In this document: positions 7,907 through 55,953 of the stretch, one piece after another | How positions within the stretch are numbered: position 1 is the stretch's first letter | Layout of the letters: every line of letters begins with the position of its first letter | Origin: Schmidtea polychroa | Lineage: Eukaryota | DNA: 64,000 nt | Assembly (NCBI GenBank): GCA_044892525.1 | Contig: CM097885.1 | Coordinates: 207,142,001 to 207,206,000 of the forward strand | Direction: 5' to 3' | The notes under the pieces: generated by a model | The model's input: the letters and a program-made list of their open reading frames with translations, nothing else | What the model was told of the DNA's origin: nothing | Database searches by the model: none | Made by a program: the position numbers and the translations under genes

Positions 7907-7985
<79 letters not shown>

Positions 7986-9350
7986 GAACTTTTTTTACCA
8001 ATTTCACTACTAATTTTTTTTCCATTGAATTTATTAAAAAGAGCTTGAAGACTATAAATCAGTAAATATATCAAAACATCGATATATTTACTGATTTATA
8101 GTCTTCAAGCACTTTTTAATAAATATATATAGTTTTTATTGTACTTCCTAGCCATGCCTTTCTTAATCACGCACTTGTATTGCACATGTCTTTCTTAATC
8201 ATAGTTTATAAAAATCAATAATAAACTTTGGTTAATACATTTATTTAATAATGTAAATTATGGAAGATTACACAAATCAATGAATATTGTTAAAAATGTT
8301 ATCAATAAAGTTCCATCTCTTGAGTGATAGATTATTTCCTCAATTGTGTAAAGAAAATGATGACGAATTCGGACGACTTATCTTACATACAGAAGTAAGA
8401 TGGATATCGAAAGGAAATTGTTTTAAAGGATTTTATGCAATATTTGATACAATTGTGATTTATCATTTAAATTGACTATTAGAATAACTTTTAAAATAAT
8501 TTTTAAATTGAATTTTTTAAATTGAAATTTTTAAAATTTAAAATTGAAAAATTAAACTAGCTTTTTAAAAAAAGTTTTATTAGTAAATAATTTTTAAATA
8601 AATATATTTTAAATATCAAATTTTAATAAATGATTTTGAAAATATTTTATTCAACGCTGAAAATTTGTTTGAAAATTATACAATATTTCATTAAATAAAT
8701 ACTTGGAATTATGTCGCTAACTTTTGAACCGGATTTAAAAAATAATTTAGAAGATGTGCTAATAATAATGTGCATTAATAATAATGTAAATAATAATGTA
8801 AATAATAATAATGTGCTAATATGATAATACGATTCAAAGACTTGCATGATAATACCGGATTGGATAATTAATCCATTTTTATCGGATGTAGAAAGTATCA
8901 GTTAAAATTTAAAAGAGCAGTTTATTAAGCTACAAAATGACTGAATCTAAAATAATATTTAATCAATGTGATTATGATGTTTTTTGGGTCAGTTTCGCTA
9001 TCAATACCCTCCTCAGTGGAAAGAGGTAAAATTACTCATCACAGCATTTAGTAGAAAAGGGTTTTAGTGCAGTAACGCATATATTAAAAAAATCACGACA
9101 CTAACACGTCTGATTTGAGAATCGCGAATTAATACATTACAATTTGCAATTGGGCATTTGATTTTCGGATGAAGATTTTTTTCCAAATAATCACTTACGC
9201 ATTTCCTATAAATAAATTGTAAAGATTATGAGTTTCAAAATAAATGATAAAACAATACCAACAAAATGAATGATTGCATTTCAAAATCGATAATTCATTT
9301 TGTTCTTTTTCGCTTTTGCAAATTAAGCATTCATTATAAATATTTATCAT
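2268..9350 (-). CDS. HOIL-1/RBCK1-like RBR E3 ubiquitin ligase, gene A (RING1-IBR-RING1-IBR-RING2), 8 exons, about 375 aa
   Basis: Hand-spliced exons, all GT-AG with the frame conserved: 9350-9259, 9205-9106, 7256-7017, 5801-5614, 2906-2807, 2761-2507, 2463-2320, 2276-2268 (1128 nt, no internal stop). Motifs: CLIC..CNHSFCWKC..CPIANC; IBR CILPQC..CHIC..CIKCKAPH..C; CMLC..CSHLFCRPC..CPKLYC; IBR CQTPNC..CRKC..CTECKAIH..C; RING2 MRCLDCKVLLEKVSGCNWVRCHNCSLELCWILKMRRWG. Human HOIL-1 has MRCPQC...KKDGCDWIRCTVCHTEICW...RWG. The last 9-nt exon is the least certain. Confidence 0.85.
3544..5012 (+). mobile_element. Internally deleted hAT transposon (Tip100/ZMYM1-like) in intron 4 of gene A
   Basis: Imperfect TIRs (CAGGCCCGTTCCTG; reverse complement of the right end is CAGTGTGTTCCTG). 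Exact 8-bp TSD AACAAGAA at 3536-3543 and 5013-5020. Frameshifted transposase C-terminus ending in a hAT dimerisation motif (FPNFSRALRIF..VTVASGERRFSKLKLIKTYLRSSMS) at about 4400-4655. Confidence 0.85.
5843..5955. repeat. Small dispersed foldback repeat, copy 1
   Basis: TATAAGAACTTTTTTTTCC..TTTCACCACTGATT..ATTTATTAAAAAGCTTGAAGAC with an internal hairpin. Related copies at 7981, at 13814 plus 29918, and near 63305. Confidence 0.6.
7912..7980. repeat. (TA)n microsatellite
   Basis: Uninterrupted TA dinucleotide run. Confidence 0.95.
7981..8125. repeat. Small dispersed foldback repeat, copy 2, with an approximately 45-bp-stem hairpin
   Basis: TTTATTAAAAAGAGCTTGAAGACTATAAATCAGTAAATATATC, a short loop, then GATATATTTACTGATTTATAGTCTTCAAGCACTTTTTAATAAA. 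Confidence 0.7.
8255..9100 (+). pseudogene. Decayed Buster/ZBED5-type hAT transposase fragment in intron 2 of gene A
   Basis: LCKENDDEFGRLILHTEVRWISKGNCF matches the hAT LHTEVRWLSRG motif. Downstream frames are broken by stops and frameshifts. Confidence 0.7.
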
Positions 9351-9790
9351 ATCTAAATAAATTGAAATGCTACGCTTTATTTCGATAATATTAGTAAAAT
9401 ATATAGTTTTTTTACTGTTCAAATTTATCAATTATACGGATCTTAATTTAAATAAATCAAGGTCAATTAATGATTATTATATCAAATTTACAATAGTCAA
9501 TAATTAATCCTAATTATATGAAAATGAATTTTCAAATTATGAATTTTCAAAATGATTTTCAAATGCAATCATTTATTTTGTTTTAGCATGATTTATTTAA
9601 TCAACATTATAATATTTATTTATAATATTGTGATTAAAATCTAAAATATGAAATTGTTTAAAAGTAATTCAGTGAAATATTTATCTAACCTTGAATTTCA
9701 AATTCAATTTGAATTAGATCCTGATTAAAATAAAATTGATTTCAAACTAATTTGTTATTTATTTTCAGTTGAATATTAATTGATTTAATA
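9351..9790. promoter_or_regulatory. Candidate bidirectional promoter and 5' UTR region between the two RBR genes
   Basis: 440-bp gap between divergent ATGs (9350 minus, 9791 plus). Each ATG is preceded by an acceptor-like sequence (TTTAG|at-ATG; TTTTCAG at 9762-9768 followed by an in-frame stop), which suggests 5' UTR introns. No specific motif was identified. Confidence 0.45.
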
Positions 9791-12700: not shown

Positions 12701-15700
12701 GTTTCGGGTTTCGATGATCGGTAGATTCGATCTATTACTTTTTTAGCGTTAACTTGAATTTATTCGATAGCTTTAATTTATTGTAAATTGTATCTCCGAT
12801 AACTTCGTAATTCACGTTGGGTTTCGTTTTAATTCTATTTTCTTCTCTACCCTTTCTCCTTTATAATTTGTGTCTTTTGATTCAGGTTGTGTTGCCTTTT
12901 ATAGTCTTCAATCAAATGGCACTTGCTGATATTAACTTTCGTTTAGATTCCTTTTTCTCGTACATTCTCTTTGGTAATTTTAGTTCTTTTATTATCTTTA
13001 CGCCATCTTTCATCTTCCCCAGATGATCTCATCCCTTTATTTAGAACAAGTTTATTTGAATTCGTTATTGATTGCCTAGTGCAATCGTGCTGCGGTACCT
13101 GATTAGAGTGTTCAAATGTTGCATTGGGTTCTCGGGTTCATTTCAAATATAAGACTGGCACAGAATGTGCTTGTTAAATACCTATTTTTGTTTAAAAATT
13201 ATATATCATTATCTATTTTCGTAACTAACAACTATAATATGTTACAGGTTATGTTTGAATAAATACATCAGATCGAATATTAGTTGCAAAATCAAATGCC
13301 CATTTCAGTTGTGCTCTACCTTGATTAGAGATTCAGTAATAAGACAAGTAAAAATTTTTAATATTTTAGATTGAAATAAATTATACCCTTTACACTACTC
13401 AATTCTTACAATTACGTATAATGCTTTAACCTTCTACTTTATTGGGTAAAATTAGTCAAAAGTACAACTTTCCATTTTTTTTAGTTCTGGAAGTTATTAT
13501 CAAAATTTAATAACCTTTTCTAATAATTTATGTGAATTTAATGTAAATTAAATGATGTAATAGTTTGTTACAGTTGTTAAAATTACTACTTTTATTTAAT
13601 CACGTTAATATTAATAAATTTTAATAATTTAAAAGTATTTCAATCTCAAATATTTAAACAAGTTTTTAGAAGAGTATAGAATAATGTTAGTAAAGGTTCA
13701 AACCAAACAAGCATTTAATTTTCAAAGTTATTATGTTTGGAAAAATGAAAAATATGTTATTTTACAAAGTCATTTTGCATAGTTTTTAATGCAGTTAATT
13801 TTATTATATTTTTATAAGAACTTTTTTTTCCAATTTCACCACTGATTATTTTTCCATTGAATTTATTAGTAGGTAGTTAGTAGCGTACTGCAACAATTAC
13901 CCCCCCCGGGGGGGGGGGGGGTTGTTGCAACTTTTTTTTTGTTGCAACTTTTGATTATGCAATTTTTCAGACTATAGTGAGGGGGTCTCGATGGTCCTGG
14001 GATTTTCAATACAAAAAATTTTTTTCAATACAAAAATCCGACTACCAATAAAAAAGCATGGAATTTTCAGACTATAGTGAGGGGGTCTCGATGGTCCTGG
14101 GATTTTCAATACAAAAAATTTTTTTCAATACAAAAATCCGACTACCACTAAAAAAGCATGGAATTTTCAGACTATAGTGAGGGGGTCTCGATGGTCCTGG
14201 GATTTTCAATACAAATAAAATTTTTTCAATACAAAAACGATGGTCCTGGGATTTTCAATACAAAAAAATTTTTTCAATACAAAAATCCGACTACCAATAA
14301 AAAAGCATGGAATTTTCAGACTATAGTGAGGGGGTCTCGATGGTCCTGGGATTTTCAATACAAAAAGCTGGTCTACACTAAAAATGCATGGTAATTTAAG
14401 GTCTCAGGATATTTTCAATACAAAAAGCTGGTGTACACTAAAAAAGCCAAGGATTTTTCAGACTATAGTGAGGTGAGTCTCCTTGGTCCTGAGAAATAGG
14501 TGGTCTACACTAAAAACGTAGTAAATTTTTCAATTACAGTAAATTATGGTCCTAAAAAATTAAATTACAGTAAATTATGGTTCTAAAAAATTAAATTACA
14601 GTAAATTATGGCTCAAATTTTTAAATTACAGTAAATTATGGTTCTAAAAATTAAATTAAAGCAAATTATGGCTCAAATTTTTCAATTACAGTAAATAATG
14701 GTTCTAAAAATTAAATTAAAGTAAATTATGGCTCAAATTTTTCAATTACAGTAAATAATGGTTCTAAAATATTAAATTACAGTAAATAATGGTTCTAAAA
14801 TTTAATTTAAGTAAATTATGGTTCTAAAATATTAAATTACAGTAAATTATGGTCCAGATTTTTCAATTAAAGTAAATAATGGTCCAAATTTTAAAATTAA
14901 AGTAAATTATGGTTCTAAAAATTAAATTATAGTAAATTATGGCTCAAATTTTTAAATTACAGTAAATTATGGTCATAAAAAATTAAATTACAGTAAATTA
15001 TGGTCAAACATTTTAAATTAAAGTAAATAATGGTCCAAATTTTTCAAATACAGTAAATTATGGGTCTAAAAATTAAATTAAATAATGGTTCTAAAAATTA
15101 AATTAAAGTAAATTATGGTTCTAAAATATTAAATTACAGTAAATTATGGTCCTAAAAAATTAAATTACAGTAAATTATGGTTCTAAAAAATTAAATTACA
15201 GTAAATTATGGTCAAACATTTTAAATTAAAGTAAATAATTGTCCAAATTTTTCAAATACAGTAAATTATGGGTCTAAAAATTAAATTAAAGTAAATAATG
15301 GTTCTAAAAATTAAATTAAAGTAAATTATGGTTCTAAAATATTAAATTACAGTAAATTATGGTCCAGATTTTTCAATTAAAGTAAATAATGGTCCAAATT
15401 TTTAAATTAAAGTAAATTTAAGTTCTTAAAAATTAAATTACAGTAAATAATGGTCCAAATTTTTAAATTAAGTAATCAATGGTAAAAAATTTTAAATAAG
15501 TAAATTAAAGTAATAATTTTTAAATTAAGTAATCAATGGTAAAAAATTTTAAATAAGTAAATTAAAGTAAATTAAAGTAAGATTTTAAAATTTAATTACA
15601 AAATAATAGAAGGTGTTTGAGAATTGAAATTTTTTAATGGAAATTTTTATGAAATATTTTTCAATGATAATTTTAGATGGAAATTTTTAAGATAATTTTT

Positions 15701-18700
15701 AATGAAAATTTTTATGAAATATTTTTCAAAGACAAATTTTAATAATAATTCAACAACAAACCAACAACTTAGTACCAACAACCAGTAACTTACGAACATG
15801 TATTAACAACCAGATACCTACAACTAGTTACTAACAACTAGTTACATGATACTAAGTAAATACAACCACCTAACAAGTACTAACAACCAAAAACAAGCAA
15901 CCAACCAGGTACCAGTTACCAACTACTAAGTACCTACAACCAACTAGTTACCTGATACCAAGTACTTACAACTATATACTAACAACCAGTTACCTGATAC
16001 CTAGTACTTACAACTAGTTACTAACAACCAAAAACAAGCAACCAACTAGGTACCAAGTACTATTAACCAAAAACAACTAGCTAACAACTAGATACCAAGT
16101 ACCTACAACCACCTACCCATTAACTAGCTACCAAGTACTTACAACTAGCTACGACCTACCAAGTACTAACAACTAACAACAACCAGGTACTAGATACCAA
16201 GTACTAACAACCTACAACAACTAGGTACTAAGCATTATCAACCAAGTACCTAAAACCACCTAACAAGTACATACAACCAACATCAACCAGGTACCTACAA
16301 CTAGATACTAACAAACAGTTACCAAGTACCTACAACCACCTACCCATTAACTAGCTACAACCAGCTAACAACTAGCTACCAAGTACTAACAACCAACAAC
16401 CAGCTAACAACTAACTACCAGATACCTACTACTTACAACCAACAACTAAGTACTAACAACCAGCTAACAACTAGATACCAGGTACTAAGCATTATCAACC
16501 AAGTACTAACAACCAAGTACAAGATACCTAGTACTGTCAACTAGATACCAAACACTTACAACCAGATGACCACATGAAATTATTGGTTAAATATGAAAAT
16601 AAGGGTTATAATTAGTTGTTTAGTAAATTATGGTGTAAAATTAAGTAATAAAGCATAAATAGATAAATTAAGGATAAGTAAATTAAAGTTAAAAAATTAA
16701 ATTAAAGTTAATTAAGGTCCAAATTTTAAAAATAAGTAATCAATGTTCTAAAAAATTAAATTAAAGTTAAATAAGTAAATTAAAGTAATAATTTTTAAAG
16801 AATTTAATTAAAGTAATAATTTTTAAATAAGTAATGTAATAAGTAAATTAAAGTAAGATTTTTAAATTTATTATCAAAAGATTGAATAACCACCAACTTT
16901 TTTGAGAAATGTAATTTTTAATGAAAATTTAAATGGAAATTTTAATGGAATAATAATAATAATAATAATAATAAAAATAATAATAATAAAAATAATAATA
17001 ATAATAATTCAACAGTTACCAACAATCGGTTACTAAATATTTTTAACTAAGTACTAACAAATAAGTACTTTCAACATGATACCACGTACTAACTCTCAAA
17101 CAACCAGATACTTACAACGAACTACTAAATTTTCTTCATTGTATTTTATGAAATGCTTTTTAAATTAATTTTTTATACATCTTCTATAATAATTTTAATT
17201 ACAATCAGTAGAAAAACCTTTTCAAATTTAAAAAAAAATGTTGATTTTCATCAAAAAAACCACAACTCATCACCACGTGAAATTTAAAATAATTTAAATT
17301 ACAATGAAAGACTAATGAATTCTAATTTACAAAACATTCTTCTTTTAATTGATAACTTATTATTGCAAAGTAAAAATCGCATTCAATAAATACTTATTGT
17401 TGATCAGTTTTATTATATATACTCTTAGTCTATCCGACAGGATGTTTTGACTCCCTAAGGGTACAGGTCGTAAGAGTACTGGTCGTATGGGTATTAGTCG
17501 TAAGGGTACAGGTCGTAAAGGTACTGGTCGTAAAGGTACTAGTCGTAGGGGTATTGGTAACACTCAACCACAACCTACCCATTAACTAGCTACTAAGTAC
17601 TAACCACTAGGTTTCAAACAACAACTACTAACAACCACCATCAAAACCCATCGAGAAATTAACAAATATCAACCTACAACTATATAACAACAATCAGTAA
17701 ACAACACTGTACCAACTACCAAATACAAAATATTCTTCATCGCATACACTATTTTCTTATCAAAATCTAAAAAGTCAACCAACTACTTACAACCAACAAC
17801 TATGTACTAACAAATTGATCTTTAAAAGCAAATACTCTTCACTTGAAAAATTGGATGAAAAAATTATTTGAACTCAAGGCATCAATAACTAGGTAAAAAT
17901 TGATTAAATTATTGTAAAAAATTTAAATTATTCGAAATAAATATCATAAAAATTTAATTAATGGACAAGAAAAAAATTCTAATCATCCAGTAAATAAAAT
18001 AAAATACTGATCATTCAAGTTGAATCAACTAAGTTAATAAATTAATAAAATTTTAAATAAAATCTAGTAGATAATTGATTTAGATTGAATAAATTAATTG
18101 AAATAAAATTAATTTTAATTATTTTTGTAAAAGTAATACATGTACTCAAATTGATTGACTGATTTCTCAATATATTCAAAAAATCAGTATAAATTCATTA
18201 CAAATATTGGATGAAAAATTAATTGAACTCAAGACATCAATAACTTGGTAAAAATTGATTAAATAATTGTAAAAATTTAAAATTTTCAAAATAAATGTCA
18301 TAAAAATGTAATTAATGGACAAGAAAGAACTTTAAATTCTAGTCATTGATCATTCAAGTTAATATGAATCAACTAAGATAATAAATTACTAAGAATTTTG
18401 AAATAAGATCTAGTAGATCTATTTATATTGAATAAATTAATTGAAATAAAATTAATTTTAATTATTTTTTTAAAAGTAATACATGTACTCAAATTGATTG
18501 ACTGATTTCTCAATATATTCAAAAAATCAGTATAAATTCATTACAATTATCAAAGTCAGCAATCTACAATAAAAATAATTATCATTAAATTCCAAAAGAG
18601 ACTAGATAACTAATGATAACATCTAACAAACCAGTAAATTCATTCAAATGACAATAATTGGTATATCCAAGTGAATTCTCCAATAAAATCATCTAAAAAG

Positions 18701-21700
18701 CATCATTTTCCCCCCTAAATATATCAATATTTAAAGATTGGTATTTTAATGATAAATACTTGTTAAAGATCATATATTCTCCTCAAACTAATAAGATTCC
18801 TTAAAATCCCTTAAATGACTATATTTCAACCCTTAATTCATATTATTACAAATAATTCATTAAAATCATCTAAAAAGCATCATTTCCCCTAAATATATCA
18901 ATATTTAAAGATTGATATTTTAATGATAAATTCCCGTAAAGGATCATATATTCCCCTCAGACTAATAAGATTCCTTAAAATCCCCTTTAAATGACTATAA
19001 TTCTAACTTTAATTCGTATTATCACGAATATTTCCCTATAAAACATGTAAAATCATTAACCCTAAATAATTTATAAAATCTAATGATAAAACTGGTTATA
19101 ATTAATTTTTTGTTAATCACTGTACTCGATATTTTAAATAAATATTACTACAATATAACTGACTAGGTCCCATTGAAAGATTTATCCATTCAATGAAATA
19201 TATTTCTTCAAATGATCATTTTTACCAATATTCAACCGATTTAATTACTAATTAAAATCAGGATTTCTTCCAATAAAGATCAATTTTCTTTAGTCGATGT
19301 TTTAAGTCCATATTTATCAACTTTTGTCATTCTCCCTCTTAAATAAAGATAAAAATAATTTAAAGTTGATATCAATCCAAATTATCTCTAAAGATTTCAT
19401 TGTCAAAACCAAGTAAATCGGTCATTAACACTACTTAATAAAACCCTGGATAATTAAAAGAGAATTTAATAAAACATTGTTCTAAAACATAAATCTAAAT
19501 TAATATACAATGAATTAATCACAACCTAATAAAACGATATAATTTCACATTATTAGTGATTCATAACTGACTAATTGCAATTTCCCTTAAAACATTGATA
19601 TTTTGCCAACATTACCCATGTAAATATTCAAAAGATTCCCATCGAAACCCATCCCTCATTAAAAGCAACCGACTATATCTTTCTTAAAATGAAATATTTC
19701 CCATATTAACCGACTATATCCCCATTAAAAAATCATATATTCCCACCTTATCTGATCTCTCATTAAATCTAACCGACTATATCCCTTTAAAAATCATATA
19801 TTCCCATCTTAACCCATCCCTCATAAAATTTAACCGACAATATCCCATCTTATCCGATCTCTCAGCAAATAATTCTACCCTTTTAAACATCTATCCGATT
19901 ATATCCCTTATTTTCCCTAAAGATTCCGCCCACTTGAGCCCTTTAATATATATCAATCCTCTTAAAATCCTCAGAGAAATTCAAAAATATGACTTTTAAT
20001 TAATTGTTATAGAACCAGACAAATAATAAGAGCCCATTAAAAGATCAAAATTCACTAAATTTTCTACAAATATTTACCATCAAATACTGGAGATGATATA
20101 TATTGTTTGATCATAATTCTTCATCGATTCAGCCAATCATTTTCAAGCAATAACAGCAAACTAAATTTCTGTATATCCTACAATAATTATCAAGTAAATT
20201 TAAAGTCATTGATAAAGTTGGTTTCTTAGCTTATGTTTTTTAAAGTGCATCAATGTGTAAATATTCTTAGAAAATTATTGAAAAATTATTTAGTCAAATA
20301 CATTACAAAGTTATCATCAAAAATCACTTAATTATTAACCTAATTGTCAATGAAATTAATTTTTATTTAAAAACTATTCAATAAAATACAACTAATTATC
20401 AAGAAATTAATTAAATTTATCAATTAAATTTATCAGTCAACATGAAATTCTTAGAAAATTATTCAATATCCTCATAAAAATTTATCATATCACTTCATTA
20501 TTGTAAAATCTCTAATTATTAACCTCATTGAAAATAATTTTTATTTAAAATTAAAAAAACAAGTCAATAAAAATACATCCAATTATCAAGAAATTAATTA
20601 AATTTATCTTAGAATTAGCATTAAATTATTAAATATTCATTCAATAAACATGAAATTTGCAAAAATGTTAGAAATCCATGAAAATGATAGATATCTACAA
20701 AAATTACGGATATTCACAAAAAAGTACGGAAATTCATGAAAATAATAGAAAATTACAAAAAAATGATAGAAATTCATAAAAATGATAGAAATTTACTTGA
20801 ATAAAACCATCAACTCTAAAAATTATCAATACCTTAAACAACAAATTTGTCTAAATAATCATTCAAATAAAAACATTAAATACCTTTACGACTAATACCC
20901 TTGCGACATGTTGAATGTGAGTAGTACCCTTGTGAGCAATACCCATAGGGGGACAGAATATTTTGTCGGATAAACTCAGAGTATATATTAATTAACTCAT
21001 TTATCATTGAATTAGTCAAATTATCGTAAATTTCGATAAAAATTCTAAAGTGGTAAGCAATGTAAAGAGAAATATTCTTTAAATTTTGATAAAATTAACA
21101 ATGAAGGTGGTAAGAATCTTCATTAAAGTGAGGAAATTATTCATTACTCGATTCAAATGGGTGAAAATAATTGGTAGAATAATTCATTAATGGAGGTAGA
21201 TAATGAGAAGTAGTATAGATAAGATGAAGGTTGATAAGAATGGATGTATTGCAACTATTTTCTAAAAATTAACACTTTAATAAAAAAAACTTTTAAAACA
21301 AATATTTGTGGGGATGTTTTAAGTGAATAATTAATCAAAATCGGCGGAATATAAGTAGAAAATCGGGGTGGGGGTTATAGGCGAATAATTAATGGAAAAT
21401 CGGGGGTAATATAGGGATTAAATAGTGGAGAATAATAGTGAATATAAGTGAGAAGGATATGTAATTTAAACTATTTTATTACGTAACAAGCCGCGACTAG
21501 TTTATTACATAACAAGCTGTGAATGGTATTTTACCAACATTTTACTAAATTTTTAAAGTATGTAATTTAATTTTAATTATATTTTAAAATTGTATATATT
21601 TTGAATATCATTCTATTGTTTAATTTCAATAATAAGTTAAAAAAATCTATAATAATTAATAAATTAATATCTTGTTAACATTTATTTAAAAATTTAAAAA

Positions 21701-24700
21701 ACTTTACTTAAAATTAGTGAAGTATTTAATTTTAATTGTATTTTATAAGACATATATTTGAGTATTAACTTATTTTGATTGAAGTATCACATTTAATATT
21801 GTGATGATTGTTTTCTAAATCGAAATATTTAGTGTAAAATAGTAAATTTAATAATAAATAGCTACAATATTAAAGGTCTTTTTTTAAAAAAAATATTTAC
21901 TTTCTATTACCTAATTCCATCATTAAGTTTAAAAAGTCTATAACTGTTAATAATTCAATTTCTTATTCACATTTTCTAATAAAACTTATATTTTTAAATA
22001 TAGTGTAAAGAATTTAATTTTAATTGTATTTTATAAGTCATTTATTTGAATATTTATCTTATTTTTATTGAAAGGAGTAATATAATTCATATTATGATAT
22101 TCGTTTCGAAATATTTAGTGTAGAATCGTAAATTTAATAATATATAGCTATTATTGCAAGTACTTATACAACAAAACTTTTTTATTTCTAATGTTTTATT
22201 CCATAAATAAGTTTTAAAGTATATAACTGGTAATAAATTAATTTCTTATTTAAATTTATTTAAAAAAGCTTTACTTATAAAATTTATATTTTCGATAGCT
22301 TATATTTGAATATTAACTTCTATTGATTGAAAAGGGTAATTGATTTAGAAATTATTTAGTGTAAATCAAAACATTTAAATTATTAAGGTATTAAAGTACC
22401 TATTCAAAAATTAAAATAAAAAGACCTAATCAATAATTTTCAATAAAATACTATTCACAGCTTGTTATGTAATAAACTAGTCACGGCTTGTTATGTAATA
22501 AACTAGTCGCGGCTTGTTACGTAATAAAATAGTTTAAATTACATATCCTTCTCACTTATATTCACTATTATTCTCCACTATTTAATCCCTATATTACCCC
22601 CGATTTTCCATTTTTTATTCGCCTATAACCCCCACCCCGATTTTCTACTTATATTCCGCCGATTTTGATTAATTATTCACTTAAAACATCCCCACAAATA
22701 TTTGTTTTAAAAGTTTTTTTTATTAAAGTGTTAATTTTTAGAAAATAGTTGCAATACATCCATTCTTATCAACCTTCATCTTATCTATACTACTTCTCAT
22801 TATCTACCTCCATTAATGAATTATTCTACCAATTATTTTCACCCATTTGAATCGAGTAATGAATAATTTCCTCACTTTAATGAAGATTCTTACCACCTTC
22901 ATTGTTAATTTTATCAAAGTTTAAAGAATATTTCTCCTTTCATTGCTTACCACTTTAGATTTTTTATCGAAATTTACGATAATTTGACTGATTCAATGAA
23001 GAATGAGTTAATTAATATATACTCTGAGTTTATCCGACAAAATATTCTGTCCCCCTATGGGTATTGCTCACAAGGGTACTACTCACATTCAACATGTCGC
23101 AAGGGTATTAGTCGTAAAGGTATTTAATGTTTTTATTTGAATGATTATTTAGGCAAATTTGATGTTTAAGGCATTGATAATTTTTAGAGTTGATGGTTTT
23201 AGTAAATATTCAAGTAAATTTCTATCATTTTTGTGAATTTTTATCGTTTTTATGAATTTCTATCATTTTTGTGGATTTCCATTATTTTCATGAATTTCCG
23301 TAATTTTTGTGAATATCTGTAATTTAATGCTAATTCTAAGGTAAATTTAATTAATTTCTTGATAATTGAATGTATTTTTATTGAATTGTTTTTTAATTTT
23401 AAATAAAAATTTATTTTTAATGAGGTTAATAATTAAAGTTTGTACAATAATCAAGTGGTAGGATAAATTTTTATGAGGATATTGAATAATTTTCTAAGAA
23501 TTTCATGTTGACTGATAAATTTAATTGATAAATTTAATTAATTTCTTGATAATTAGTTGTATTTTATTGATTAGTTTTTAAATAAAAATTAATTTCATTG
23601 ACAATTAGGTTAATAATTAAGTGATAGAATAAATTTTTGATGATAACTTTGTAATATATTTGAATAAATAATTTTTTCAATAATTTTCTAAGAATATTTA
23701 CATATTGATGATCTTTAAAAACATAAGCTAAGAAACCAGTTAACTTTATCAGGGACTTTAAATTTACGTGATAATTATTGTAGGATATAAAGAAATTTAG
23801 TTTGCTGTTATTGCTTGAAAATGATTGGCTGAATCGATGAAGAATTATGATCAATCAATATATATCATCTCCAGTATTTGATGGTAAATATTTGTAGAAA
23901 ATATTGATTTTTGATCTTTTAGTGAACTCTTACTACATAGCTACTAAATTATTTCAATGGAAGAATATTTGGTGTCTATAACAATTAAGTCATATTTTTG
24001 AAGTTCTTTAAAGATTTTAAGAGGATTAATATATTTTAAAGGGCTCAAGTGGGTAGAATTGAATGATATATTCGGTTAGATGTTTAAAGGGGTAGAAATA
24101 TTTGGTGAGAGATCGGTTAAGATGGGATATTGTTGGTTAAATTTAATGAGGGATGGGTTAAGATGGGAATATATGATCTTTTGAGGGGATATAGTCGGTT
24201 AGATTTAATGAGAGATCAGATAAGGTGGGAATATATCATTGTAAGGGAGATATAGTCGATTGAATTTAATGAAGGATGGGTTAAGATGGGAATATAGTCG
24301 GTTAAATTTAATGAGACATGGGTTAAGATGGGAATATATGATTTTTTTAATGGTGATGTTGGTAAAATATCATTGTTTTAAGGGAAATGTCAATTAGTCA
24401 GTTATGTATCAATAATAATTATATCGTTTTATTAGGTTGTGATTAATTCATTGTATATTAATTTAGATTTATGTTTTAGAACAATGTTCTATTAAGTAAG
24501 GATAATGATCGATTTACTTGGTTTTGACGATGAAAACTTTACAGATAAATGGGATTGATATCAACTTTAAATTATTTTTATCTTTATTTAGACGGACAAC
24601 GACAAAAGTTGACCATTTGAAGAAATATATTTTATTGAATGGATAAATTTAATCTTTCAATGGGACCTAGTCAGTTATATTTATTTTAAATTTCAAGTAC

Positions 24701-26765
24701 AGTGATTTACAAAAATTTACAGTGATTAACAAAAATTTAATTATAACTGGTTTTATCAATAGTGAAACATGTATGATAATAGGAATTAAAGTTAGAATTA
24801 TAGTCATTTAAAGGGGATTTTAAGCAATCTTATTAGTCTGAGGTAAATATATAACCTTTTAAGGATATTTATCGATAAAATACTAATCTTTAAAGATAGT
24901 TATTTCAGGGAAATTTGATGCTTTTTAGATGATTTTAGTGAAATATTTGTAATAATATGGATTAAGGGTAGAAATATAGTCATTTAAGAGATTTTAAGGA
25001 ATCTTGTTAGTTTGAGGTGAATATATAGTCTTTTAAGGGTACTTATCATTAAAATATCAAACTTTAAAGATAGTGTTATTTCAATGAAATTTGATGCTTT
25101 TTAGATGATATTTGTAATAATATGAATTAAGGATAGAAATATAGTCATTTAAGGGGATTTTAAGGAATCTTGTTAGTTTGAGGTGAATATATGATCTTTA
25201 ACAAGTACTTATCGATAAGATACTAATCTTAAAAGATATAGATATTTCAGGGAAAATGATTCTTTTTAGATGATTTTATTGGAGAATTCACTTGGATATA
25301 CCAATTATTTAAATAAATTTACTGGTTTATTAGATGTTATCATTAGTTATCAGTCTCTTTTGGAATTTTATGATAATTATTTTTATGGTAGATTGCTGAC
25401 TTTGATAATTGTAATGAATTTATACTGATTTTTTTTTGAATATATTGAGAAATCAGTCAATCAATTTGAGTACATGTATTACTTTTAAAAAAATACTTAA
25501 AATTAATTTTATTTCAATTAATTTATTCAATCTAAATCAATTATCTACTAGATCTTATCTTATTAATTTATTATCTTAGTTGATTCAACTTGAATGATCA
25601 ATGTTTTTTTTTATTTACTTGATGACTAGAATTTTTTCCTGTCCATTAATTAAATTTTTATGATATTTATTTCGAATATTTTAAATTTTTACAATAATTT
25701 AATCAATTTTTACCTAGTTATTGATGCCTTGAGTTCAATTAATTTTCCATCTAATTTTTCAAGTGATGAGTATTTTTCTTTTAAAGATCAATTTGTTAGT
25801 ACATAGTTGTTGGTTCTAGGTAGTTGGTTGTTAGTACTTGGTACTTGGTAGTTGGTATCTGATTGACTTTTTAGATTTTGATAAGAAGATATTGTATGTG
25901 ATGAAGAATATTTTGTATTTAATTGCTATTATTTTTATGTGTGGTTAGTTGATTGTTGGTACTTGGTATCTTGTTGTAAGTACTTGGTAGCAGGTATCTG
26001 GTTGTAAGTATCTAGTTGTAGGTTGATATTTGTTAATTTCTCGATGGGTTTTGATGGTGGTTGTTAGTACATGGTTGTAAGTGTTTAGTATTTAGTTGTT
26101 TGAAACCTAGTGGTTAGTACATGGTAGCTAATTAATGAGTAGGTGGGGATTGAGAGTGATCAATACCCCTACGACTAGTACCTTTACGACCAGTACCCTT
26201 ACGACTAATACCCTTACGACCAGTACCCTTACGACCAGTACCCTTACGACCTGTACCCTTAGGGGGGTCAAAACATCCTGTCGGATAAACTCAGAGTATA
26301 TATAATAAAACCGATCAATAATAAGTATTTATTGAATGCGATTTTTACATTGCAATAATAAGTCAGTAGTTATCATTTAAAAGAAGAATGTTTTGTAAAT
26401 TAGAATTCATTAGTCTTTCATTGTAATTAAAATTATTTTGAATTCCACGTGGTGTTAGAGTTGACAATTATTCATTTTTTGATGAAAATCAACATTTTTG
26501 TTAAATTTGAAAAGGTTTTTCTACTGATTGTAATTAAACATATTTTTGAAGACAGATAAAAAATTAATTTAAAAAACAATTCATAAAATACAATGAAGAA
26601 GATTTAGTTGGTTGTTAGTACTTGGTTGTTTTTACTTGGTTGATTGAGATTTAGTTAGTATGTGGTATCATGTTGTAAGTATTTATTTATTTGTTAGCAC
26701 CTAGTTAAAAATACATGATCGTTGTTGGAATCTGATTGTTGAATTATTATTTTTATTATTATTAA

Positions 26766-26821
<56 letters not shown>

Positions 26822-29800
26822 CATTAAAATTTCCATTTAAATTTTCATTATAAATTACATTTCTCAAAAAAGTTGGTGGTTATTCAATCTTTTGATAATA
26901 AATTTAAAAATCTTACTTTAATTTACTTATTTAATTTAAAATTTGAACCATTGGATACTTAATTTTAAATTTTGAACCTTAATTTACTTATTTAAAATTT
27001 TTAACTTTAATTTACCTAATTATTCTTTATTTCTTAATTTTACACCATAATTTACTTAACAACTAAATATAATCCTTATTTTCATATTTAACCAATAATT
27101 TCATGTGGTCATCTGGTTGTAAGTGTTTGGTATCTAGTTGACAGTGCTTAGTACTAGGTAAGTTATTTGGTTGTTAGTACTTGGTTGTATGTACTTGGTA
27201 TCTAGTTGTTAGTAACTAGTTGTAGGTAATTAATGCTTAGTAGTTGGTAACTGGTTGTTAGTACTTGGTATCTAGTACCTAGTTAGCTGGTTGTAGCTAG
27301 TTAATGGGTAGGTTGGTTGTTAGTACTTAGTATTTAGTTGGTTGATAATGCTTAGTACCTGGTTGTTGTTGGTTGTTAGTACTTGGTATCTAGTACCTAG
27401 TTGGTTGGTTGTTAGTACTTAGTATTTAGTTGGTTGATAATGCTTAGTACCTGGTTGTTGTTGGTTGTTAGTACTTGGTATCTAGTACCTAGTTGGTTGG
27501 TTGTTTTTGGTTGATAGTACTTGGTATCTAGTTGTAAGTATTTGGTATCAGGTAACTGGTTGTTAGTATCTAGTTGTAGGTTGTAGGTACTTAGTAGTTA
27601 GTTGATGATGCTTAGTACCTGGTTGATGTTGGTTGTAAGTACTTGGTATATAGTACCTAGTTGGTTGGTTGTTAGTAACTAGTTGTAAGTACTTGGTAGC
27701 AGGTAACTGGTTGTTAGTATCTAGTTGTAGGTTGTAGGTACTTAGTAGTTAGTTGATGATGCTTAGTACCTGGTTGATGTTGGTTGTAAGTACTTGGTAT
27801 ATAGTACCTAGTTGGTTGGTTGTTAGTACTTAGTATTTAGTTGGTTGATAATGCTTAGTACCTGGTTGTTGTTGGTTGTTAGTACTTGGTATCTAGTACC
27901 TAGTTGGTTGGTTGTTAGTAACTAGTTGTAAGTACTTGGTAGCAGGTAACTGGTTGTTAGTATCTAGTTGTAGGTTGTAGGTACTTAGTAGTTAGTTGAT
28001 GATGCTTAGTACCTGGTTGATGTTGGTTGTAAGTACTTGGTATCTAGTTGATAGCTGGTTGTTTTTGGTTGTAGGTACTTAGTAGTTGGTTAATAATGCT
28101 TAGTAACTGGTTGTTGACGGTTGAGTGCTTGGTAGGTGGTAGCTAGTTGGTTGATTGTTTTTGGTTGTTAGTACTTGGTATCAGGTAACTGGTTGTTAGT
28201 ATCTAGTTGTAGGTATCTGGTTGATGTTGGTTGTAGGTACTTAGTAGTTGGTAATTAATGCTTAGTACCTGGTTGTTGTTGGTTGTTAGTACTTGTTAGG
28301 TGGTAGTTAGTTGTTAGCTGGTTGTTGTCGGTTGTTAGTACTTGGCAGGTGGTAGTTAGTTGTTAGTACTTGGTAGGTGGTTGTAGGTTGTAAGTAGTTG
28401 GTATCAGGTTGTTAGTAACTAGTTGTAGGTATCTGGTTGGTAATACATGTTCGTAAGTTACTGGTTGTTGGTACTAAGTTATTGGTTTTGTTGTTGAATT
28501 ATTATTAAAATTTGTCTTTGAAAAATATTTCATAAAAATTTTCATTAAAAATTATCTTAAAAATTTCCATCTAAAATTATCATTGAAAAATATTTCATAA
28601 AAATTTCCATTAAAAATTACCATTGAAAAATAATTCATTAAAAATTAACTTAAAAAATATTTCATAAAAATTTTCATTAAAAAATTTCAATTCTCAAACA
28701 CCTTCTATTATTTCAACTTTTTGTTAATAAATTTTAAAATCTTACTTTAATTTACTTTAATTTACTTATTTAAAAATTATTACTTTAATTTACTTATTTA
28801 AAATTTTTTACCATTGATTACTTAATTTAAAAATTTGGACCTTAATTAACTTTAATTTAATTTTTAGAACCTTAATTTACTTTAATTTAAAAATTTGGAC
28901 CATTATTTACTTTAATTTAATTTTTAAGAACCATAATTTACTGTAATTCAATTTTTAGGACCATAATTTACTGTAATTTGATTTTTTAGGACCATAATTT
29001 ACTGTAATTGAAAAATTTACCACGTTTTTAGTGTAGACCACCTATTTCTCAGGACCAAGGAGACTCACCTCACTATAGTCTAAAAAATCCTTGGCTTTTT
29101 TAGTGTAGACCAGCTTTTTGTATTGAAAATATCCTGAGACCTTAAATTACCATGCTTTTTTAGTGTAGACCAGCTTTTTGTATTGAAAATATCCTGAGAC
29201 CTTAAATTACCACGTTTTTTTAGTGTAGACCACCTATTTCTCAGGACCAAGGAGACTCACCTCACTATAGTCTAAAAAATCCTTGGCTTTTTTAGTGTAG
29301 ACCAGCTTTTTGTATTGAAAATATCCTGAGACCTTAAATTACCATGCTTTTTTAGTGTAGACCAGCTTTTTGTATTGAAAATATCCTGAGACCTTAAATT
29401 ACTACGTTTTTTTAGTGTAGACCACCTATTTCCCCAGGACCATCGTTTTATTGTATTGAAAAAATTTTATTTGTATTGAAAATCCCAGGACCATCGAGAC
29501 CCCCTCACTATAGTCTGAAAATTCCATGCTTTTTTAGTGGTAGTCGGATTTTTGTATTGAAAAAAATTTTTTGTATTGAAAATCCCAGGACCATCGAGAC
29601 CCCCTCACTATAGTCTGAAAATTCCATGCTTTTTTAGTGGTAGTCGGATTTTTGTATTGAAAAAAATTTTTTGTATTGAAAATCCCAGGACCATCGAGAC
29701 CCCCTCACTATAGTCTGAAAATTCCATGCTTTTTTAGTGGTAGTCGGATTTTTGTATTGAAAAAAATTTTTTGTATTGAAAATCCCAGGACCATCGAGAC

Positions 29801-31806
29801 CCCCTCACTATAGTCTGAAAAATTGCATAATCAAAAGTTGCAACAAAAAAAAAGTTGCAACAACCCCCCCCCCCCCCGGGGGGGGTAATTGTTGCAGTAC
29901 GCTACTAACTACCTACTTTTATTAAAAAGAGAGCTTAAAGACTATAAATCAGTAATATATCGATGTTTTTTTATACTCACGAATTTTCGGAACTGCAATT
30001 TCATTTTTATATTTTTAGTTGAATTTGTAAATTGTTCTTACAATTTCGACAAATTTTCCTGTGACAACAATCATGTAATAATTACGTCATTTTACTTAAA
30101 CATTTACTAATAATTTGTCGCTTCTTAATTGAAAAAATGAGTTGCAATTATTTGGACTTTATTTCCAAGCAGAACAGTTCGGGAGTATTTTCTATACAAA
30201 ATCATAAGCTTCGAAAGCATAAATGAAAAAAATTTAAAAGTAATTACTTAACTAACTTAACGACCGCCTTATATAATAAGTTTCGTCCAATCAGGACTAA
30301 GTGGTGTTGTTTTTTGTCTATTTTTCTTTATTTCCTATATTTTAATTGTTTTTATTAGGTATTATTTTGTTTTATTTTGCTACCTTATTGTTTTATTTAT
30401 TTTCTATATTTTGGTATAATTTTGCCGATTTTCCGTTAATCTTTTTGTGTGTAATGACCTATTTCTATTTTTTTCTAATTTTTATTAATATTTTATGTCC
30501 TTATTTTGTGTTTTTTCCATATTTATGTTTTGTTCTTTTAATTCTTATTTTTATTAAATTATTTTTTTTCTTTTTGTCTGTTGTCTAGGGTTAATATCTT
30601 ATTTCTGTATACTTAGTTCTGTTTCCTGTGATTCTTATTTTTAACTGTTTTCATCTTATTTTATTATTTATTTAAATTTTCTTATTAATTCTTTCAAATC
30701 CTTATTTTTAGTTTGTTTTTACCTAGTTTATTTAATGTTAAATTTATTTTGTTTATTCGTTTCTACTTTCGACTCTTTCCTATATTCATTTCAGTCCAAC
30801 ACCACTTTCCAATTAAGCCAAACACATATGACGTAACAAAGAAATTTTAACGAACAGAGACATGACTCATCATTATACTGAACAAAGACATTTTACGGAA
30901 TAAAGACATGACTCATCATATTTTGAATTTCCAAAGGTTAAATAAAGTCAGACCTTCAAACAAAAGTATCATTCGAAAGATCTTGAAGATCTCTATCCAA
31001 TGGTTATATTCTCGAAGGTCTAAGGTGTAAAACCTTCAAAGGGTCAAAAACATTCNNNNNNNNNNNNNNNNNNNNNNNNNNNNNNNNNNNNNNNNNNNNN
31101 NNNNNNNNNNNNNNNNNNNNNNNNNNNNNNNNNNNNNNNNNNNNNNNNNNNNNNNNNNNNNNNNNNNNNNNNNNNNNNNNNNNNNNNNNNNNGAATATGA
31201 TGGTCATACCCTCGAAAGTTTATGGTAGGTCATTGATAATAATATTGATAATAATAATAATAATAACTCCCGCGCGCGAATTAATAACTTTAAATCTAGT
31301 AATGATATCTCATTAAAAAGGTCTTGCACTGGGCTTTAAAATAAGACATCTATCAATAAAATTGGTTGATAGGAACAATAACTTTTGGTTTGCCAAAAAG
31401 TAGATCACCCCAGAAACAAAGACATAATTTTTAAAAATATTTTTACGATGAGTCATTGTCTTTGTTCTAAAAATAGATGTCTTTGTTCTAAAAGGATGAG
31501 TTGTCGGTTATTATGTTTTAAAAATTTGAACCCCTTGAAGGTTTTTTTAGTTTCAGGTTCCTTCATAAACCTTTGAAAGTATGACCATGATACTTACATA
31601 AAAAATACCTTTTGTTTGATATATATTGAAATTTTTGAACCTTGGACCCTTCAACCTTCGAACTCATCATCAAAAGTCTTTTTGAATGATATATAACTTG
31701 TAAGGTTTGAAAAAACATTTAAGTTTGAACACCTTTGAAGGTTATTGACCGACCATAAACTTTCGAGGGTATGACCATCATATTCGCCTTTCAAATACCT
31801 TTTGTT

Positions 31807-54377: not shown

Positions 54378-55953
54378 TTGCCAACAACTCGATCATCTAT
54401 GCCAGATAAAACTGTAGCTGATACCCCTTTCACTACAACAATAGACATTTCAGATTGTATCTATAATATCATTTATTTGGCCTCAGCGCTTATGACATTA
54501 ACGGAACCCATTGAACTTTTGCAGGACATGGAAATGTTTAATTTCTATGAAGGAGGGATACGGAATGGGTTAACATTTGTTAACAAACATTATTTTGCAA
54601 GTTCTGAAGACACAATTTGTATGGTTGGGCCTTAAGCTAAAAGCTTCCGTATGCTGACTTTGAATGGGTGATTGATGATCTTGATTCCGTCTTGAATGAA
54701 TGTGTGAATGAAAATATTGAAATCCTTCCATATGGCTATACTATGGAGGTTGATATTGATATCCCTGATTGTTTGCATGATTTTTGAATGATTTTCCGAT
54801 TGCACCGGAAAAGATATGCCCGCCTAATTCGAAAGTTGAGAAGCTGATGCTCACGCATTGGCCGAAGAAGAACCATGTTCTTCATTGGAGGCTTCTCAAG
54901 CTGTATATAGAATTGGGGGCTGTAATTAAAACTGTACAAAGAGCAATTAAATTCACACATTCACCCATTTTTAAATCGTACATAGACAAAAACACTAATT
55001 TGAGAGCCAATTCTACATGCGAGCTATATAGAAATTTATAGAGATTTTATAGAGATCTGTATAAATTATTTAACAATAGCTTGTACGGTAAATCTATCGA
55101 GATCCTTAAAAAACGGATGAATTTGAGGCTATGCAATTCAGCTGAAAAGATGATTGTATATGCATCAAAACCTACTTTCAGAAAATCTTTCAAAATTGAC
55201 GATGACCTGATTGCGGCACATCTTGATAAAGATTCTATATGTTTAGACAGGCCTAGCTATATTGGTCAAACAGTGTTAGATTTGTCTAAACTACTGATGT
55301 ACGAGCTTCAGTATCTGGAATTGGCTAAATATAGAAACGAATTTAATTGTGATATAAATATCGTTGCTGGGGACACTGGCTCCTTTTTTCTTGAGGTTAG
55401 GCACTGTAAGCTTGACGCTCTTTTACCGGCAATGATTCTTGACAATCTTTTAGACACTATCAACTATGACCCATCACATCCCTTAAACTCGAGAAACCTT
55501 GATTCTGTGATAGTGAAGTTTAAAGATGAAAGTAAAGGTCTCGGGTATAAGGAGTGGGTTTTCTTAAGACCCAAGTGTTATAGTTTGTTAGGGGCCGAAG
55601 ATAATTTAAAAGCAAAGGAAGTCAGATTGATAGGGACTGAAATTGGGCACCAGTCATATTTAGACTGTTACAATAACAATGTATTATTCTCTGTGCCACA
55701 AGCTAGAATAGGGACGCGCAACCCCCAGCTTCTTACATTTAAAAATGCCGAGATTGCCTTGTCAAACAACAACGACAAACGATTATGGGTGGAGAAAAAT
55801 TCTAGTCTCGCATTTCGGCATTATTTAGGAATAGATGCCTTAGATGTTGATCAAGTATTTTCAGAAATTGGTCCACTATTCGGAGGTCTAAGTCCATATT
55901 TCAATGATGACGACAATGATATTGATATAGATGACGTATTGTTATCGAATTGA
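54378..55953 (+). pseudogene. Decayed Maverick/Polinton-type family B DNA polymerase (C-terminal catalytic region)
   Basis: Across three frames: GGIRNGLTFVNKHY, LPYADFEWV, MEVDIDIP, LNDFPIAPEK, KLFNNSLYGKSIE (KxxxNSxYG motif), VLDLSKLLMY, AGDTGS (degenerate YxDTDS), FKDE, LRPKCYS and DKR. Stops and frameshifts are present. Further decayed sequence probably extends upstream to about 53.3 kb. Confidence 0.8.

What the first reader, a model, noticed from the sequence alone, without database searches (positions are those of the whole stretch)
13868..29917. 16-kb gene-less foldback element with Maverick/Polinton termini: almost the whole element is terminal inverted repeat
Seen in sequence: AGTAGGTAGTTAG...CTAACTACCTACT ends, an exact 6-bp TSD (TTTATT), a restorable empty site, arms of 7666 and 7474 bp, a 910-bp spacer, and no genes. 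Established: Mavericks/Polintons have AG...CT ends, 6-bp TSDs, TIRs usually of hundreds of bp to about 1 kb, and sizes around 15-20 kb. Inference: this is a non-autonomous Maverick of near-normal length in which the arms replaced the viral gene block. It could arise by template switching or hairpin replication, and might be mobilised, or even packaged, in trans. Near-autonomous length despite no cargo would fit a size constraint, but that is speculative.
Basis: partly seen in the sequence, partly recalled or inferred. Interest (0 to 1): 0.9.

Follow-up and report, generated by a model that had tools for sequence, protein, structure and literature searches.

The report
Gene-less 16-kb foldback transposon, Maverick-like ends
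A 16-kb piece of mobile DNA with no genes, built as one giant inverted repeat full of short tandem repeats, has inserted precisely into this animal genome, and its ends and insertion scar look like those of Maverick/Polinton virus-like elements, though no link to a coding Maverick could be tested.

Summary
Window 13868-29917 (16,050 bp) is a colinear inverted repeat. The arms are about 7.67 and 7.45 kb and the spacer about 0.93 kb. The ends read AGTAGGTAGTTAG...CTAACTACCTACT, with TTTATT on both sides. The element sits in a short dispersed repeat whose uninterrupted copies elsewhere in the window carry a single TTTATT. That shows a true insertion with a 6-bp target-site duplication. It has no genes: no Pfam hit, no Maverick protein similarity, and no stop-free run longer than chance. 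46% of it is tandem arrays.

"Almost all TIR" needs refining. Only the outer 0.4-1 kb is 96-99% identical. The interior is 85-92% identical where alignable, and the 0.85 kb next to the spacer is about 95%.

A 6-bp duplication, AG...CT ends (5 of 6 positions of the published AGT-AGT end motif), a TIR of a few hundred bp and a 16-kb size all fit Maverick/Polinton. A decayed Maverick polymerase fragment lies 25 kb away. The defining test, a coding Maverick with the same ends, could not be run, because no other copy was found in any searchable collection.

Best reading: a non-autonomous foldback element moved in trans, probably by Maverick machinery (0.5). Main rival: a Foldback-like transposon of another superfamily.

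The parts
13862..13867 (.). Left copy of the 6-bp target-site duplication (TTTATT)
   Evidence: unoccupied paralogs carry this hexamer once.
13868..29917 (.). Whole foldback element, 16,050 bp, gene-less
13868..13963 (+). Unique terminal 96 bp. It holds the end motif AGTAGGTAG..., with GTAG repeated, and two full copies of the palindromic 8-mer GTTGCAAC plus one 7-of-8 variant.
   Evidence: The mirror copy is at 29822-29917.
13889..13929 (+). Subterminal hairpin/cruciform-forming palindrome around a C8/G14 run
   Evidence: DNA fold -21.2 kcal/mol, z = -4.8, 0 of 200 shuffles fold as well. The mirror copy is at 29856-29896.
13868..14237 (+). Near-identical outer TIR. It is 99% identical to 29549-29917 and includes 100-bp tandem units: 2.7 copies on the left, 3.7 on the right.
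13868..21534 (+). Left arm (7,667 bp), A/C-rich on the + strand, 43% tandem arrays (periods 100, 30/151, 13, 14-42, 15, 174, 61, 19, 26 bp)
21535..22468 (.). Central spacer, about 0.93 kb and 84% A+T. No ORF and no tandem array detected by TRF; by eye there are loosely repeated direct units.
22469..29917 (-). Right arm (7,449 bp), the mirror of the left arm. It is G/T-rich on the + strand and 55% tandem arrays, with different copy numbers.
20682..21534 (+). Inner high-identity block, about 95% (92-98% by window) to 22469-23325. It is more alike than the mid-arm.
29918..29923 (.). Right copy of the 6-bp target-site duplication (TTTATT)
7968..8072 (+). Uninterrupted paralog of the target repeat, an in-window 'empty site'. 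A second one lies at 5842-5897.
   Evidence: the left-flank match ends at 8035 and the right-flank match starts at 8030, so they overlap by exactly the 6-bp hexamer.
54480..55824 (+). Neighbour, not part of the element: a decayed C-terminal fragment of a Maverick/Polinton protein-primed DNA polymerase B. The N-terminal part is missing. It is read in three frames, so at least two frameshifts, with one in-frame stop between the two open stretches I translated.

Best explanation
This is a real, transposed, non-autonomous foldback element. It was integrated by an enzyme that cuts the target with a 6-bp stagger.

The working parts are the two near-identical ends: the outer 0.4-1 kb, comprising the AGTAGG... 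end motif with short terminal reiteration, a subterminal hairpin-forming palindrome, and 100-bp subterminal repeats. The rest is non-coding filler, an old and now diverged palindrome made largely of expandable tandem arrays around a 0.9-kb spacer.

The enzyme most likely came in trans from a Maverick/Polinton, whose retrovirus-type integrase gives 6-bp duplications and whose published ends are of the AG...CT / AGT-AGT type.

Shown: insertion, 6-bp duplication, end sequence, arm structure and absence of genes.

Inferred: that the helper is a Maverick; that the outer TIR is kept identical by function while the interior drifts; and that the palindrome arose by a copy-back (template-switch) or hairpin event and then grew by array expansion.
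For: - Precise insertion with a single-copy target hexamer in paralogous empty sites.
- Termini unique and exactly inverted.
- Published Maverick features: perfect 6-bp duplications, end motifs (AGT)2//(ACT)2 or (AG)3//(CT)3, TIR 46-1,447 bp (mean 402), size 16,862 +/- 1,678 bp. Here: AGTAGG//CCTACT, 6 bp, 370 bp at 99%, 16,050 bp.
- Polinton is listed with 6-bp duplications. The other 6-bp group named in the literature I read, IS3EU/GingerRoot, has TA..TA or TG..CA ends, which this element lacks.
- Mavericks exist or existed in this genome. There is a polymerase B fragment at 54480-55824 whose relatives sit in contigs with pPolB, an rve integrase and a faint hit to the A32-type packaging ATPase.
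- Identity is highest at the tips (99%) and lower inside (85-92%), as expected if only the ends are under constraint.
- The subterminal hairpin is far more stable than shuffles.
Against: - Only one copy is available.
- No autonomous element with the same ends was found, and none could be looked for in the host genome, which is in no searchable collection.
- AG...CT is two bases, and AGTAGG matches the published hexamer at 5 of 6 positions only.
- That motif was defined in vertebrates, whereas this host is probably an arthropod.
- The arms hold no Maverick gene remnant.
- Arms made of tandem arrays are the hallmark of Foldback-type cut-and-paste elements, not a described Maverick feature.
- Gene-less Mavericks are almost unmentioned in the open literature searched.
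- The Maverick relatives fetched showed no recognisable TIRs within the DNA held, so their ends could not be compared.
Confidence: 0.5

Rival explanations
1. A Foldback-like non-autonomous cut-and-paste DNA transposon of another superfamily, possibly undescribed. Its long arms of tandem repeats hold arrays of transposase-binding sites, as in Drosophila FB or Galileo. The resemblance to Maverick ends is coincidental.
For: - The build is classic Foldback: a unique outer domain, then tandem arrays with different copy numbers in the two arms, a variable central loop and no genes.
- Motifs resembling the terminal 13-mer recur inside the arm arrays: 17 matches with up to 2 mismatches against about 1 expected, although the array copies are not independent. 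This recalls subterminal binding-site arrays.
- hAT, pogo and mariner-type elements are abundant around it.
- Galileo shows that Foldback-like arms arise in unrelated superfamilies (abstract of PMC3573991).
Against: - The duplication is 6 bp. From my own knowledge, not re-verified here, Foldback/MULE elements give about 9 bp, P/Galileo 7-8 bp and hAT 8 bp.
- IS3EU/GingerRoot give 6 bp but with TA..TA or TG..CA ends.
- No transposase in the window has these termini.
- A 7-bp reading (TTTATTA) is possible only if the ends are asymmetric by one base.
- I recall rare hAT subgroups named for 5- and 6-bp duplications, but could not verify this.
Confidence: 0.33
2. A copy-back 'defective genome' of a Maverick virus. 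During protein-primed replication from one end the polymerase switched template, which produced a molecule with the same end at both tips. That molecule was kept near unit length because it is packaged, and one copy was then integrated.
For: - Both tips are the same sequence, with short terminal reiteration of the kind that the literature ties to jumping-back in protein-primed replication.
- The total length of 16,050 bp lies inside the published, apparently constrained Maverick size range.
- The palindrome has a unique central loop, as a template switch would leave.
- From my own knowledge, unverified here, incomplete adenovirus particles carry such inverted-duplication genomes.
Against: - A copy-back of one Maverick end should carry that end's genes or their wrecks, and there are none over 7.5 kb.
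- The arms differ by 8-15% in unique stretches while the duplication is perfect and the tips are 99% identical. The palindrome is therefore much older than this insertion and has been propagating as such.
- A size argument from one copy carries no weight.
Confidence: 0.1
3. Not a mobile element: a local palindromic duplication, or an assembly artefact from foldback-chimeric long reads.
For: Large palindromes are a known artefact class. The assembly has gaps or masked runs nearby at 31056-31192, 50991-51272 and 56017-56183.
Against: - The arms differ by hundreds of substitutions and by repeat copy number, whereas artefacts give near-perfect arms.
- The ends are sharp, and paralogous empty sites show the target hexamer duplicated exactly.
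Confidence: 0.04

Closest known systems
Maverick/Polinton elements (Barreat and Katzourakis 2021, PMC8097293; lizard and nematode examples in PMC3014272 and bioRxiv 10.1101/2024.01.15.575659)
   Same: 6-bp target-site duplication. Ends start AG and finish CT. The first six bases match the AGT-AGT motif at 5 of 6 positions. The high-identity TIR is a few hundred bp (published 46-1,447 bp, also 584 and 744 bp). Total length is about 16 kb.
   Different: It has no polymerase, integrase, capsid, ATPase or protease, nor any remnant of them. The inverted homology runs through the whole element. Nearly half of it is tandem arrays. No shared termini with a coding Maverick have been shown.
Foldback-type elements (Drosophila FB; Galileo of the P superfamily, PMC3573991)
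   Same: Long, internally repetitive inverted arms with differing copy numbers, a unique outer domain, a central loop and usually no coding capacity.
   Different: The duplication length (6 bp here) does not fit what I recall for FB (about 9 bp) or Galileo (7 bp). At 16 kb with 7.5-kb arms it is at or beyond the upper end of those families.
IS3EU/GingerRoot DNA transposons (PMC10045372)
   Same: 6-bp target-site duplications made by an integrase-like DDE enzyme.
   Different: Their ends are TA..TA or TG..CA, whereas here they are AG..CT. Giant foldback arms have not been reported for them in the text read.
Tlr1 elements of Tetrahymena (sometimes viewed as non-autonomous Polintons, PMC5499653)
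   Same: Polinton-related elements with unusually long, complex terminal inverted repeats.
   Different: Tlr1 elements carry genes and are ciliate germline elements. This element is gene-less and sits in an animal-type genome.

Membership tests
Maverick/Polinton | 6-bp target-site duplication | tested here: met
   TTTATT on both sides, single in two paralogous empty sites.
Maverick/Polinton | Ends 5'-AG...CT-3' with a short reiterated end motif, (AGT)2//(ACT)2 or (AG)3//(CT)3 | tested here: inconclusive
   AG...CT is met. AGTAGG//CCTACT matches (AGT)2 at 5 of 6 positions, and GTAG is repeated at positions 2-5 and 6-9. The motif was defined in vertebrates.
Maverick/Polinton | Terminal inverted repeats of tens of bp to about 1.4 kb | tested here: met
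   370 bp at 99%, and 96-98% out to about 0.7-1 kb.
Maverick/Polinton | Encodes protein-primed polymerase B and an rve integrase, plus capsid, ATPase and protease genes | tested here: not met
   There is no ORF, Pfam domain or tblastn match inside 13868-29917. It can therefore at most be a non-autonomous derivative.
Maverick/Polinton (non-autonomous derivative) | Termini shared with a coding Maverick of the same genome | not testable with these tools
   No host-genome collection is available. There was no match in the window, IMG/VR, JGI metagenomes or GTDB genomes. The related Maverick contigs showed no recognisable TIRs in the DNA held.
Foldback (FB/MULE-type) | Long arms of tandem repeats around a loop | tested here: met
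Foldback (FB/MULE-type) | Duplication of about 9 bp (from my own knowledge) | tested here: not met
   The duplication is 6 bp.
P superfamily / Galileo | 7-8-bp duplication (from my own knowledge) | tested here: not met
   The duplication is 6 bp. Seven bp is possible only with ends asymmetric by one base.
IS3EU/GingerRoot | TA..TA (or TG..CA) termini with a 6-bp duplication | tested here: not met
   The duplication length fits, but the termini are AG..CT.
hAT | 8-bp duplication and short TIRs | tested here: not met
   The duplication is 6 bp. The 8 bases on either side do not match. The hAT-type copies in the window have unrelated ends.

The most novel reading that the evidence does not exclude
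The element is a copy-back defective genome, or satellite, of an endogenous Maverick virus. It keeps only the replication and integration ends, is padded with satellite arrays to virion-compatible length, and is propagated at the expense of coding Mavericks. Its 7.5-kb inverted arms could also act as a hairpin source of small RNAs against elements that share its ends. If so, it would be sequence-level evidence that animal Mavericks replicate by protein priming and package by length.
Probability: 0.1. Interest if true: 0.85.

Novelty: new variant of a known kind. Interest (0 to 1): 0.55.

Why it matters
Mavericks/Polintons are widely thought to be integrated viruses, yet their replication and packaging have never been observed directly. 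Gene-less derivatives are almost unreported: one passing mention in the open literature searched.

A gene-less element that keeps only Maverick-type ends would show which sequences suffice in cis. If it forms a family, its length distribution would test the proposed genome-size constraint using sequence data alone.

Whatever its superfamily, a 16-kb near-palindrome is a likely fragile site and a possible long-hairpin RNA locus. It is also a trap for assemblers and repeat annotators.

If it instead belongs to another superfamily, it would be an unusually large Foldback-type element with a 6-bp duplication, which matches none of the described Foldback-like families.

Tried and rejected
- **Other copies.** I searched the terminal 18- and 20-mers and a 25-mer from the 100-bp subterminal repeat in IMG/VR, JGI metagenomes and GTDB genomes. 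Nothing was found except six chance 18-mer hits in unrelated contigs of 38-58% GC.
- **Other copies in the window.** There are none.
- **Host genome by exact protein look-up.** Four window ORFs are not on record. A 94%-identical hAT copy exists only on a 1.9-kb Logan contig.
- **Host identity.** It remains unresolved. The nearest named relatives of a flanking IBR exon are mite and mosquito RBCK1-like proteins at 32-35%. Transposon relatives are in aphids, spiders, turtles, bats and frogs, so these are horizontally spreading families.
- **Ends of related Mavericks.** Three contigs (L007-L009) carry pPolB, an rve integrase and a faint A32-type ATPase hit, but no TIR pair is recognisable within the 16-21 kb held.
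- **Link to the in-window polymerase fragment.** An 11-of-13 match to the terminal 13-mer lies about 0.5 kb downstream at 56334-56346, in the orientation of a right end. There is no similarity beyond it and no partner, and about one such match is expected by chance in the window. It is a lead only.
- **Structure and profile searches on the polymerase fragment.** PDB and PHROGs searches gave nothing, and Pfam gave only a weak hit. Its identity rests on its homologs.
- **Bacterial-type scans.** The promoter/terminator scan and the Rfam and tRNA scans gave nothing relevant.
- **Assembly artefact or plain duplication.** Rejected because of arm divergence and the empty-site evidence.
Full report
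**1. Observation**

The window is AT-rich (about 28% G+C) with three N runs outside the feature.

Ends and flanks:
- The element starts at 13868 with AGTAGGTAGTTAG and ends at 29917 with the exact reverse complement.
- TTTATT precedes it at 13862-13867 and follows it at 29918-29923.
- The 32-nt terminus occurs only at these two places, once on each strand, against none expected.

Arms:
- BLAST of the element against its own reverse strand, a colinear chain of those matches, and a global MAFFT alignment of the left arm against the reversed right arm all show inverted homology along the whole length.
- The left arm is 13868-21534 and the right arm is 22469-29917.
- The spacer, 21535-22468, is 84% A+T and has no open reading frame.

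**2. It is a true insertion**

- BLAST of the two flanks against the rest of the window showed that the element sits inside a copy of a short dispersed repeat.
- At 7968-8072 the left-flank match ends at 8035 and the right-flank match begins at 8030. This uninterrupted paralog therefore carries the hexamer once.
- A second paralog at 5842-5897 shows the same.
- This is independent, in-window evidence for a precise insertion with a 6-bp target-site duplication.
- The base after the hexamer (A) is also the element's first base. A 7-bp duplication with ends offset by one base cannot be strictly excluded, but 6 bp is the only length that keeps the ends symmetric.

**3. No genes**

- The longest stop-free stretch in six frames is 103 codons, against a mean of 94 and a maximum of 138 in shuffled sequence.
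- The listed ORFs are low-complexity translations of repeats.
- None of 46 stop-free segments of 45 or more codons has a credible Pfam match: one spurious E=0.0027 among 46 scans.
- tblastn with all called proteins of three related Maverick contigs finds nothing inside the element.

**4. Anatomy**

The outer 96 bp are unique. They hold:
- the end motif, with GTAG at positions 2-5 and 6-9;
- a hairpin-forming palindrome around a C8/G14 run (-21.2 kcal/mol as DNA, z = -4.8, no shuffle as stable);
- two full copies of the palindromic 8-mer GTTGCAAC plus one 7-of-8 variant.

Then follow 100-bp tandem units, 2.7 copies on the left and 3.7 on the right. After them comes a series of arrays with periods of 192, 30/151, 13, 14-42, 15, 174, 61, 19 and 26 bp, with different copy numbers in the two arms. 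Tandem arrays make up 46% of the element, 43% of the left arm and 55% of the right.

Each arm is strand-asymmetric. The strand whose 5' end is at the tip is A/C-rich.

Arm identity varies along the length:

| Region | Identity between arms |
|---|---|
| Outer 370 bp | 99% |
| Out to about 0.7-1 kb, allowing for copy-number differences | 96-98% |
| Most alignable interior | 85-92% |
| Windows dominated by arrays (register ambiguous); one interior window near 18.3 kb is also low | 40-75% |
| The 0.85 kb next to the spacer | about 95% (92-98% by window) |

So the whole element is a palindrome, but only the outer kilobase or less behaves like a conserved TIR. The duplication is perfect and the tips are nearly identical, while unique interior stretches differ by 8-15%. 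The palindrome is therefore older than this insertion, and the family, if there is one, has been moving as a foldback.

**5. What moved it**

Target-site duplication length is a superfamily trait. The literature read here gives 6 bp for Polinton, 4-5 bp for Ginger, and 6 bp for IS3EU/GingerRoot, whose ends are TA..TA or TG..CA.

| Feature | Vertebrate Mavericks | This element |
|---|---|---|
| Target-site duplication | perfect 6 bp | 6 bp |
| End motif | (AGT)2//(ACT)2 or (AG)3//(CT)3, tied to jumping-back in protein-primed replication | AGTAGG//CCTACT |
| TIR | 46-1,447 bp (mean 402) | 370 bp at 99% |
| Size | 16,862 +/- 1,678 bp, thought to be constrained | 16,050 bp |

Lizard and nematode examples have TIRs of 584 and 744 bp. 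All of this fits.

Mavericks are or were also present in this genome.
- Window 54480-55824 (+) is the C-terminal part of a protein-primed polymerase B.
- It is read in three frames and interrupted by one in-frame stop, and its N-terminal part is absent.
- Its relatives (48-67% identical) carry PF03175 and lie in contigs with an rve integrase and a faint hit to the A32-type packaging ATPase.

**6. What is missing**

- The test that defines a non-autonomous member, termini shared with a coding element, could not be run.
- The host genome is in no searchable collection. No other copy turned up in IMG/VR, JGI metagenomes or GTDB genomes.
- The related Maverick contigs show no recognisable TIRs in the DNA held.
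- An 11-of-13 match to the terminal 13-mer lies about 0.5 kb downstream of the polymerase fragment, in the orientation of a right end. About one such match is expected by chance, and nothing beyond it is similar. I treat it as a lead only.
- The arm architecture is that of Foldback-type elements, which have arisen in unrelated superfamilies; Galileo is a P-superfamily example.
- Terminus-like motifs recur inside the arm arrays, as binding-site arrays would.

A Foldback-like element of another superfamily is therefore the main rival. Its weakness is the 6-bp duplication, which fits none of the Foldback-like families I know of. Those values come from my own knowledge and were not re-verified.

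**7. Mechanism I commit to**

It is a non-autonomous element whose cis-acting parts are the outer TIRs. It was integrated in trans by a Maverick-type integrase (confidence 0.5).

The palindrome probably began as a copy-back or hairpin event and then grew by array expansion. The tips stay alike because both must be recognised, or, under protein-primed replication, are corrected against each other. The higher identity beside the spacer may reflect local arm-to-arm conversion or a later inner foldback; this remains unexplained.

The stronger version, a packaged defective Maverick genome held at unit length, is not excluded. It is weakened by the complete lack of gene remnants in 7.5-kb arms and rests on a single length (0.1). 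An artefact or plain duplication is unlikely (0.04).

**8. Novelty and score**

It is a new variant of a known kind. It is either the first well-documented gene-less foldback derivative with Maverick-type ends, or an unusually large Foldback-type element with an atypical duplication length. Interest is moderate (0.55): the structure and the insertion are solid and uncommon, but the exciting part of the claim is untested.

Protein queries from the polymerase fragment were single-frame stretches. Comparisons across frames reported only outer bounds and counts.

Noticed in passing
window 54480-55824 (+), next to the N run 56017-56183: A decayed C-terminal fragment of a Maverick/Polinton protein-primed DNA polymerase B. 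It is read in three frames with one in-frame stop, and the N-terminal part is absent. No other Maverick gene is in the window. The closest relatives (65-67% identical) are on short ENA metagenome contigs.
   Followed up: yes
window 56334-56346 (-): An 11-of-13 match to the foldback's terminal 13-mer (it reads AGTAGATAGATAG on the minus strand). It lies about 0.5 kb downstream of the polymerase fragment, oriented like a right-hand element end. There is no similarity beyond it and no inverted partner in the window. About one such match is expected by chance.
   Followed up: partly
window 15926-17594 (-) and 25822-28359 (+): Motifs within 2 mismatches of the terminal 13-mer recur inside the arm arrays, in the orientation opposite to the nearer terminus. 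They may be binding-site arrays or just related low-complexity repeats.
   Followed up: partly
L009 20464-20626 (ENA ERZ25039515 contig_27322): A 163-bp mini-foldback with 58-nt arms (91% complementary) whose ends are AGT x3 ... ACT x3. It lies about 0.8 kb beyond the last gene of a Maverick related to the window's polymerase fragment. It has no clear target-site duplication and no other copy in the fetched loci.
   Followed up: partly
window 41934-46426: A nested pair of transposons. A pogo element (25-nt TIRs at 41934-41958 and 46402-46426; transposase 42058-43353, minus strand) carries an inserted ZBED5/FAM200-type hAT element (43-nt imperfect inverted ends, 79% complementary, at 43911-43953 and 46302-46344; ORF 44137-46083). 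The pogo TIR matches a lizard TcMar non-autonomous family TIR printed in PMC3014272 at 19 of 20 positions. Its protein relatives are in bats, lizards, frogs, spiders, whipworm and leech, a pattern typical of horizontally spreading families.
   Followed up: partly
window 2384-2761, 6954-7271, 9198-9431 (-); 32947-33303, 36936-37226 (+): Five exon-like open stretches that look like paralogous IBR/RBR-type (RBCK1-like) zinc-finger segments lie on both sides of the foldback, in opposite orientations. Only the first was scanned (Pfam IBR, E=1e-05); the others are judged from their cysteine-rich translations. This looks like a lineage-specific expanded gene family. The best database relative is 61% identical and unnamed. 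The nearest named relatives are mite and mosquito proteins at 32-35%.
   Followed up: partly
window 8020-8125: The repeat that served as target is itself a small palindromic, MITE-like sequence. The foldback inserted at its left edge. Other copies lie at 5842-5897 and 63308-63360.
   Followed up: partly
window 38302-38625 (-): A WD40-repeat open stretch (Pfam WD40, E=3.8e-09) that looks like a decayed RACK1-type pseudogene.
   Followed up: no
window 30828-31055 and 31905-32115: 148-bp inverted ends (96% identical) flank the N run 31056-31192. This is probably another small transposon just right of the foldback.
   Followed up: no
window 34100-35100 and 60590-62660: Two hAT-type copies share near-identical translated stretches, at 34100-34375 (-) and 62389-62661 (+). 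A mariner-type transposase remnant lies at 11222-12020 (+). The whole window is transposon-rich.
   Followed up: no
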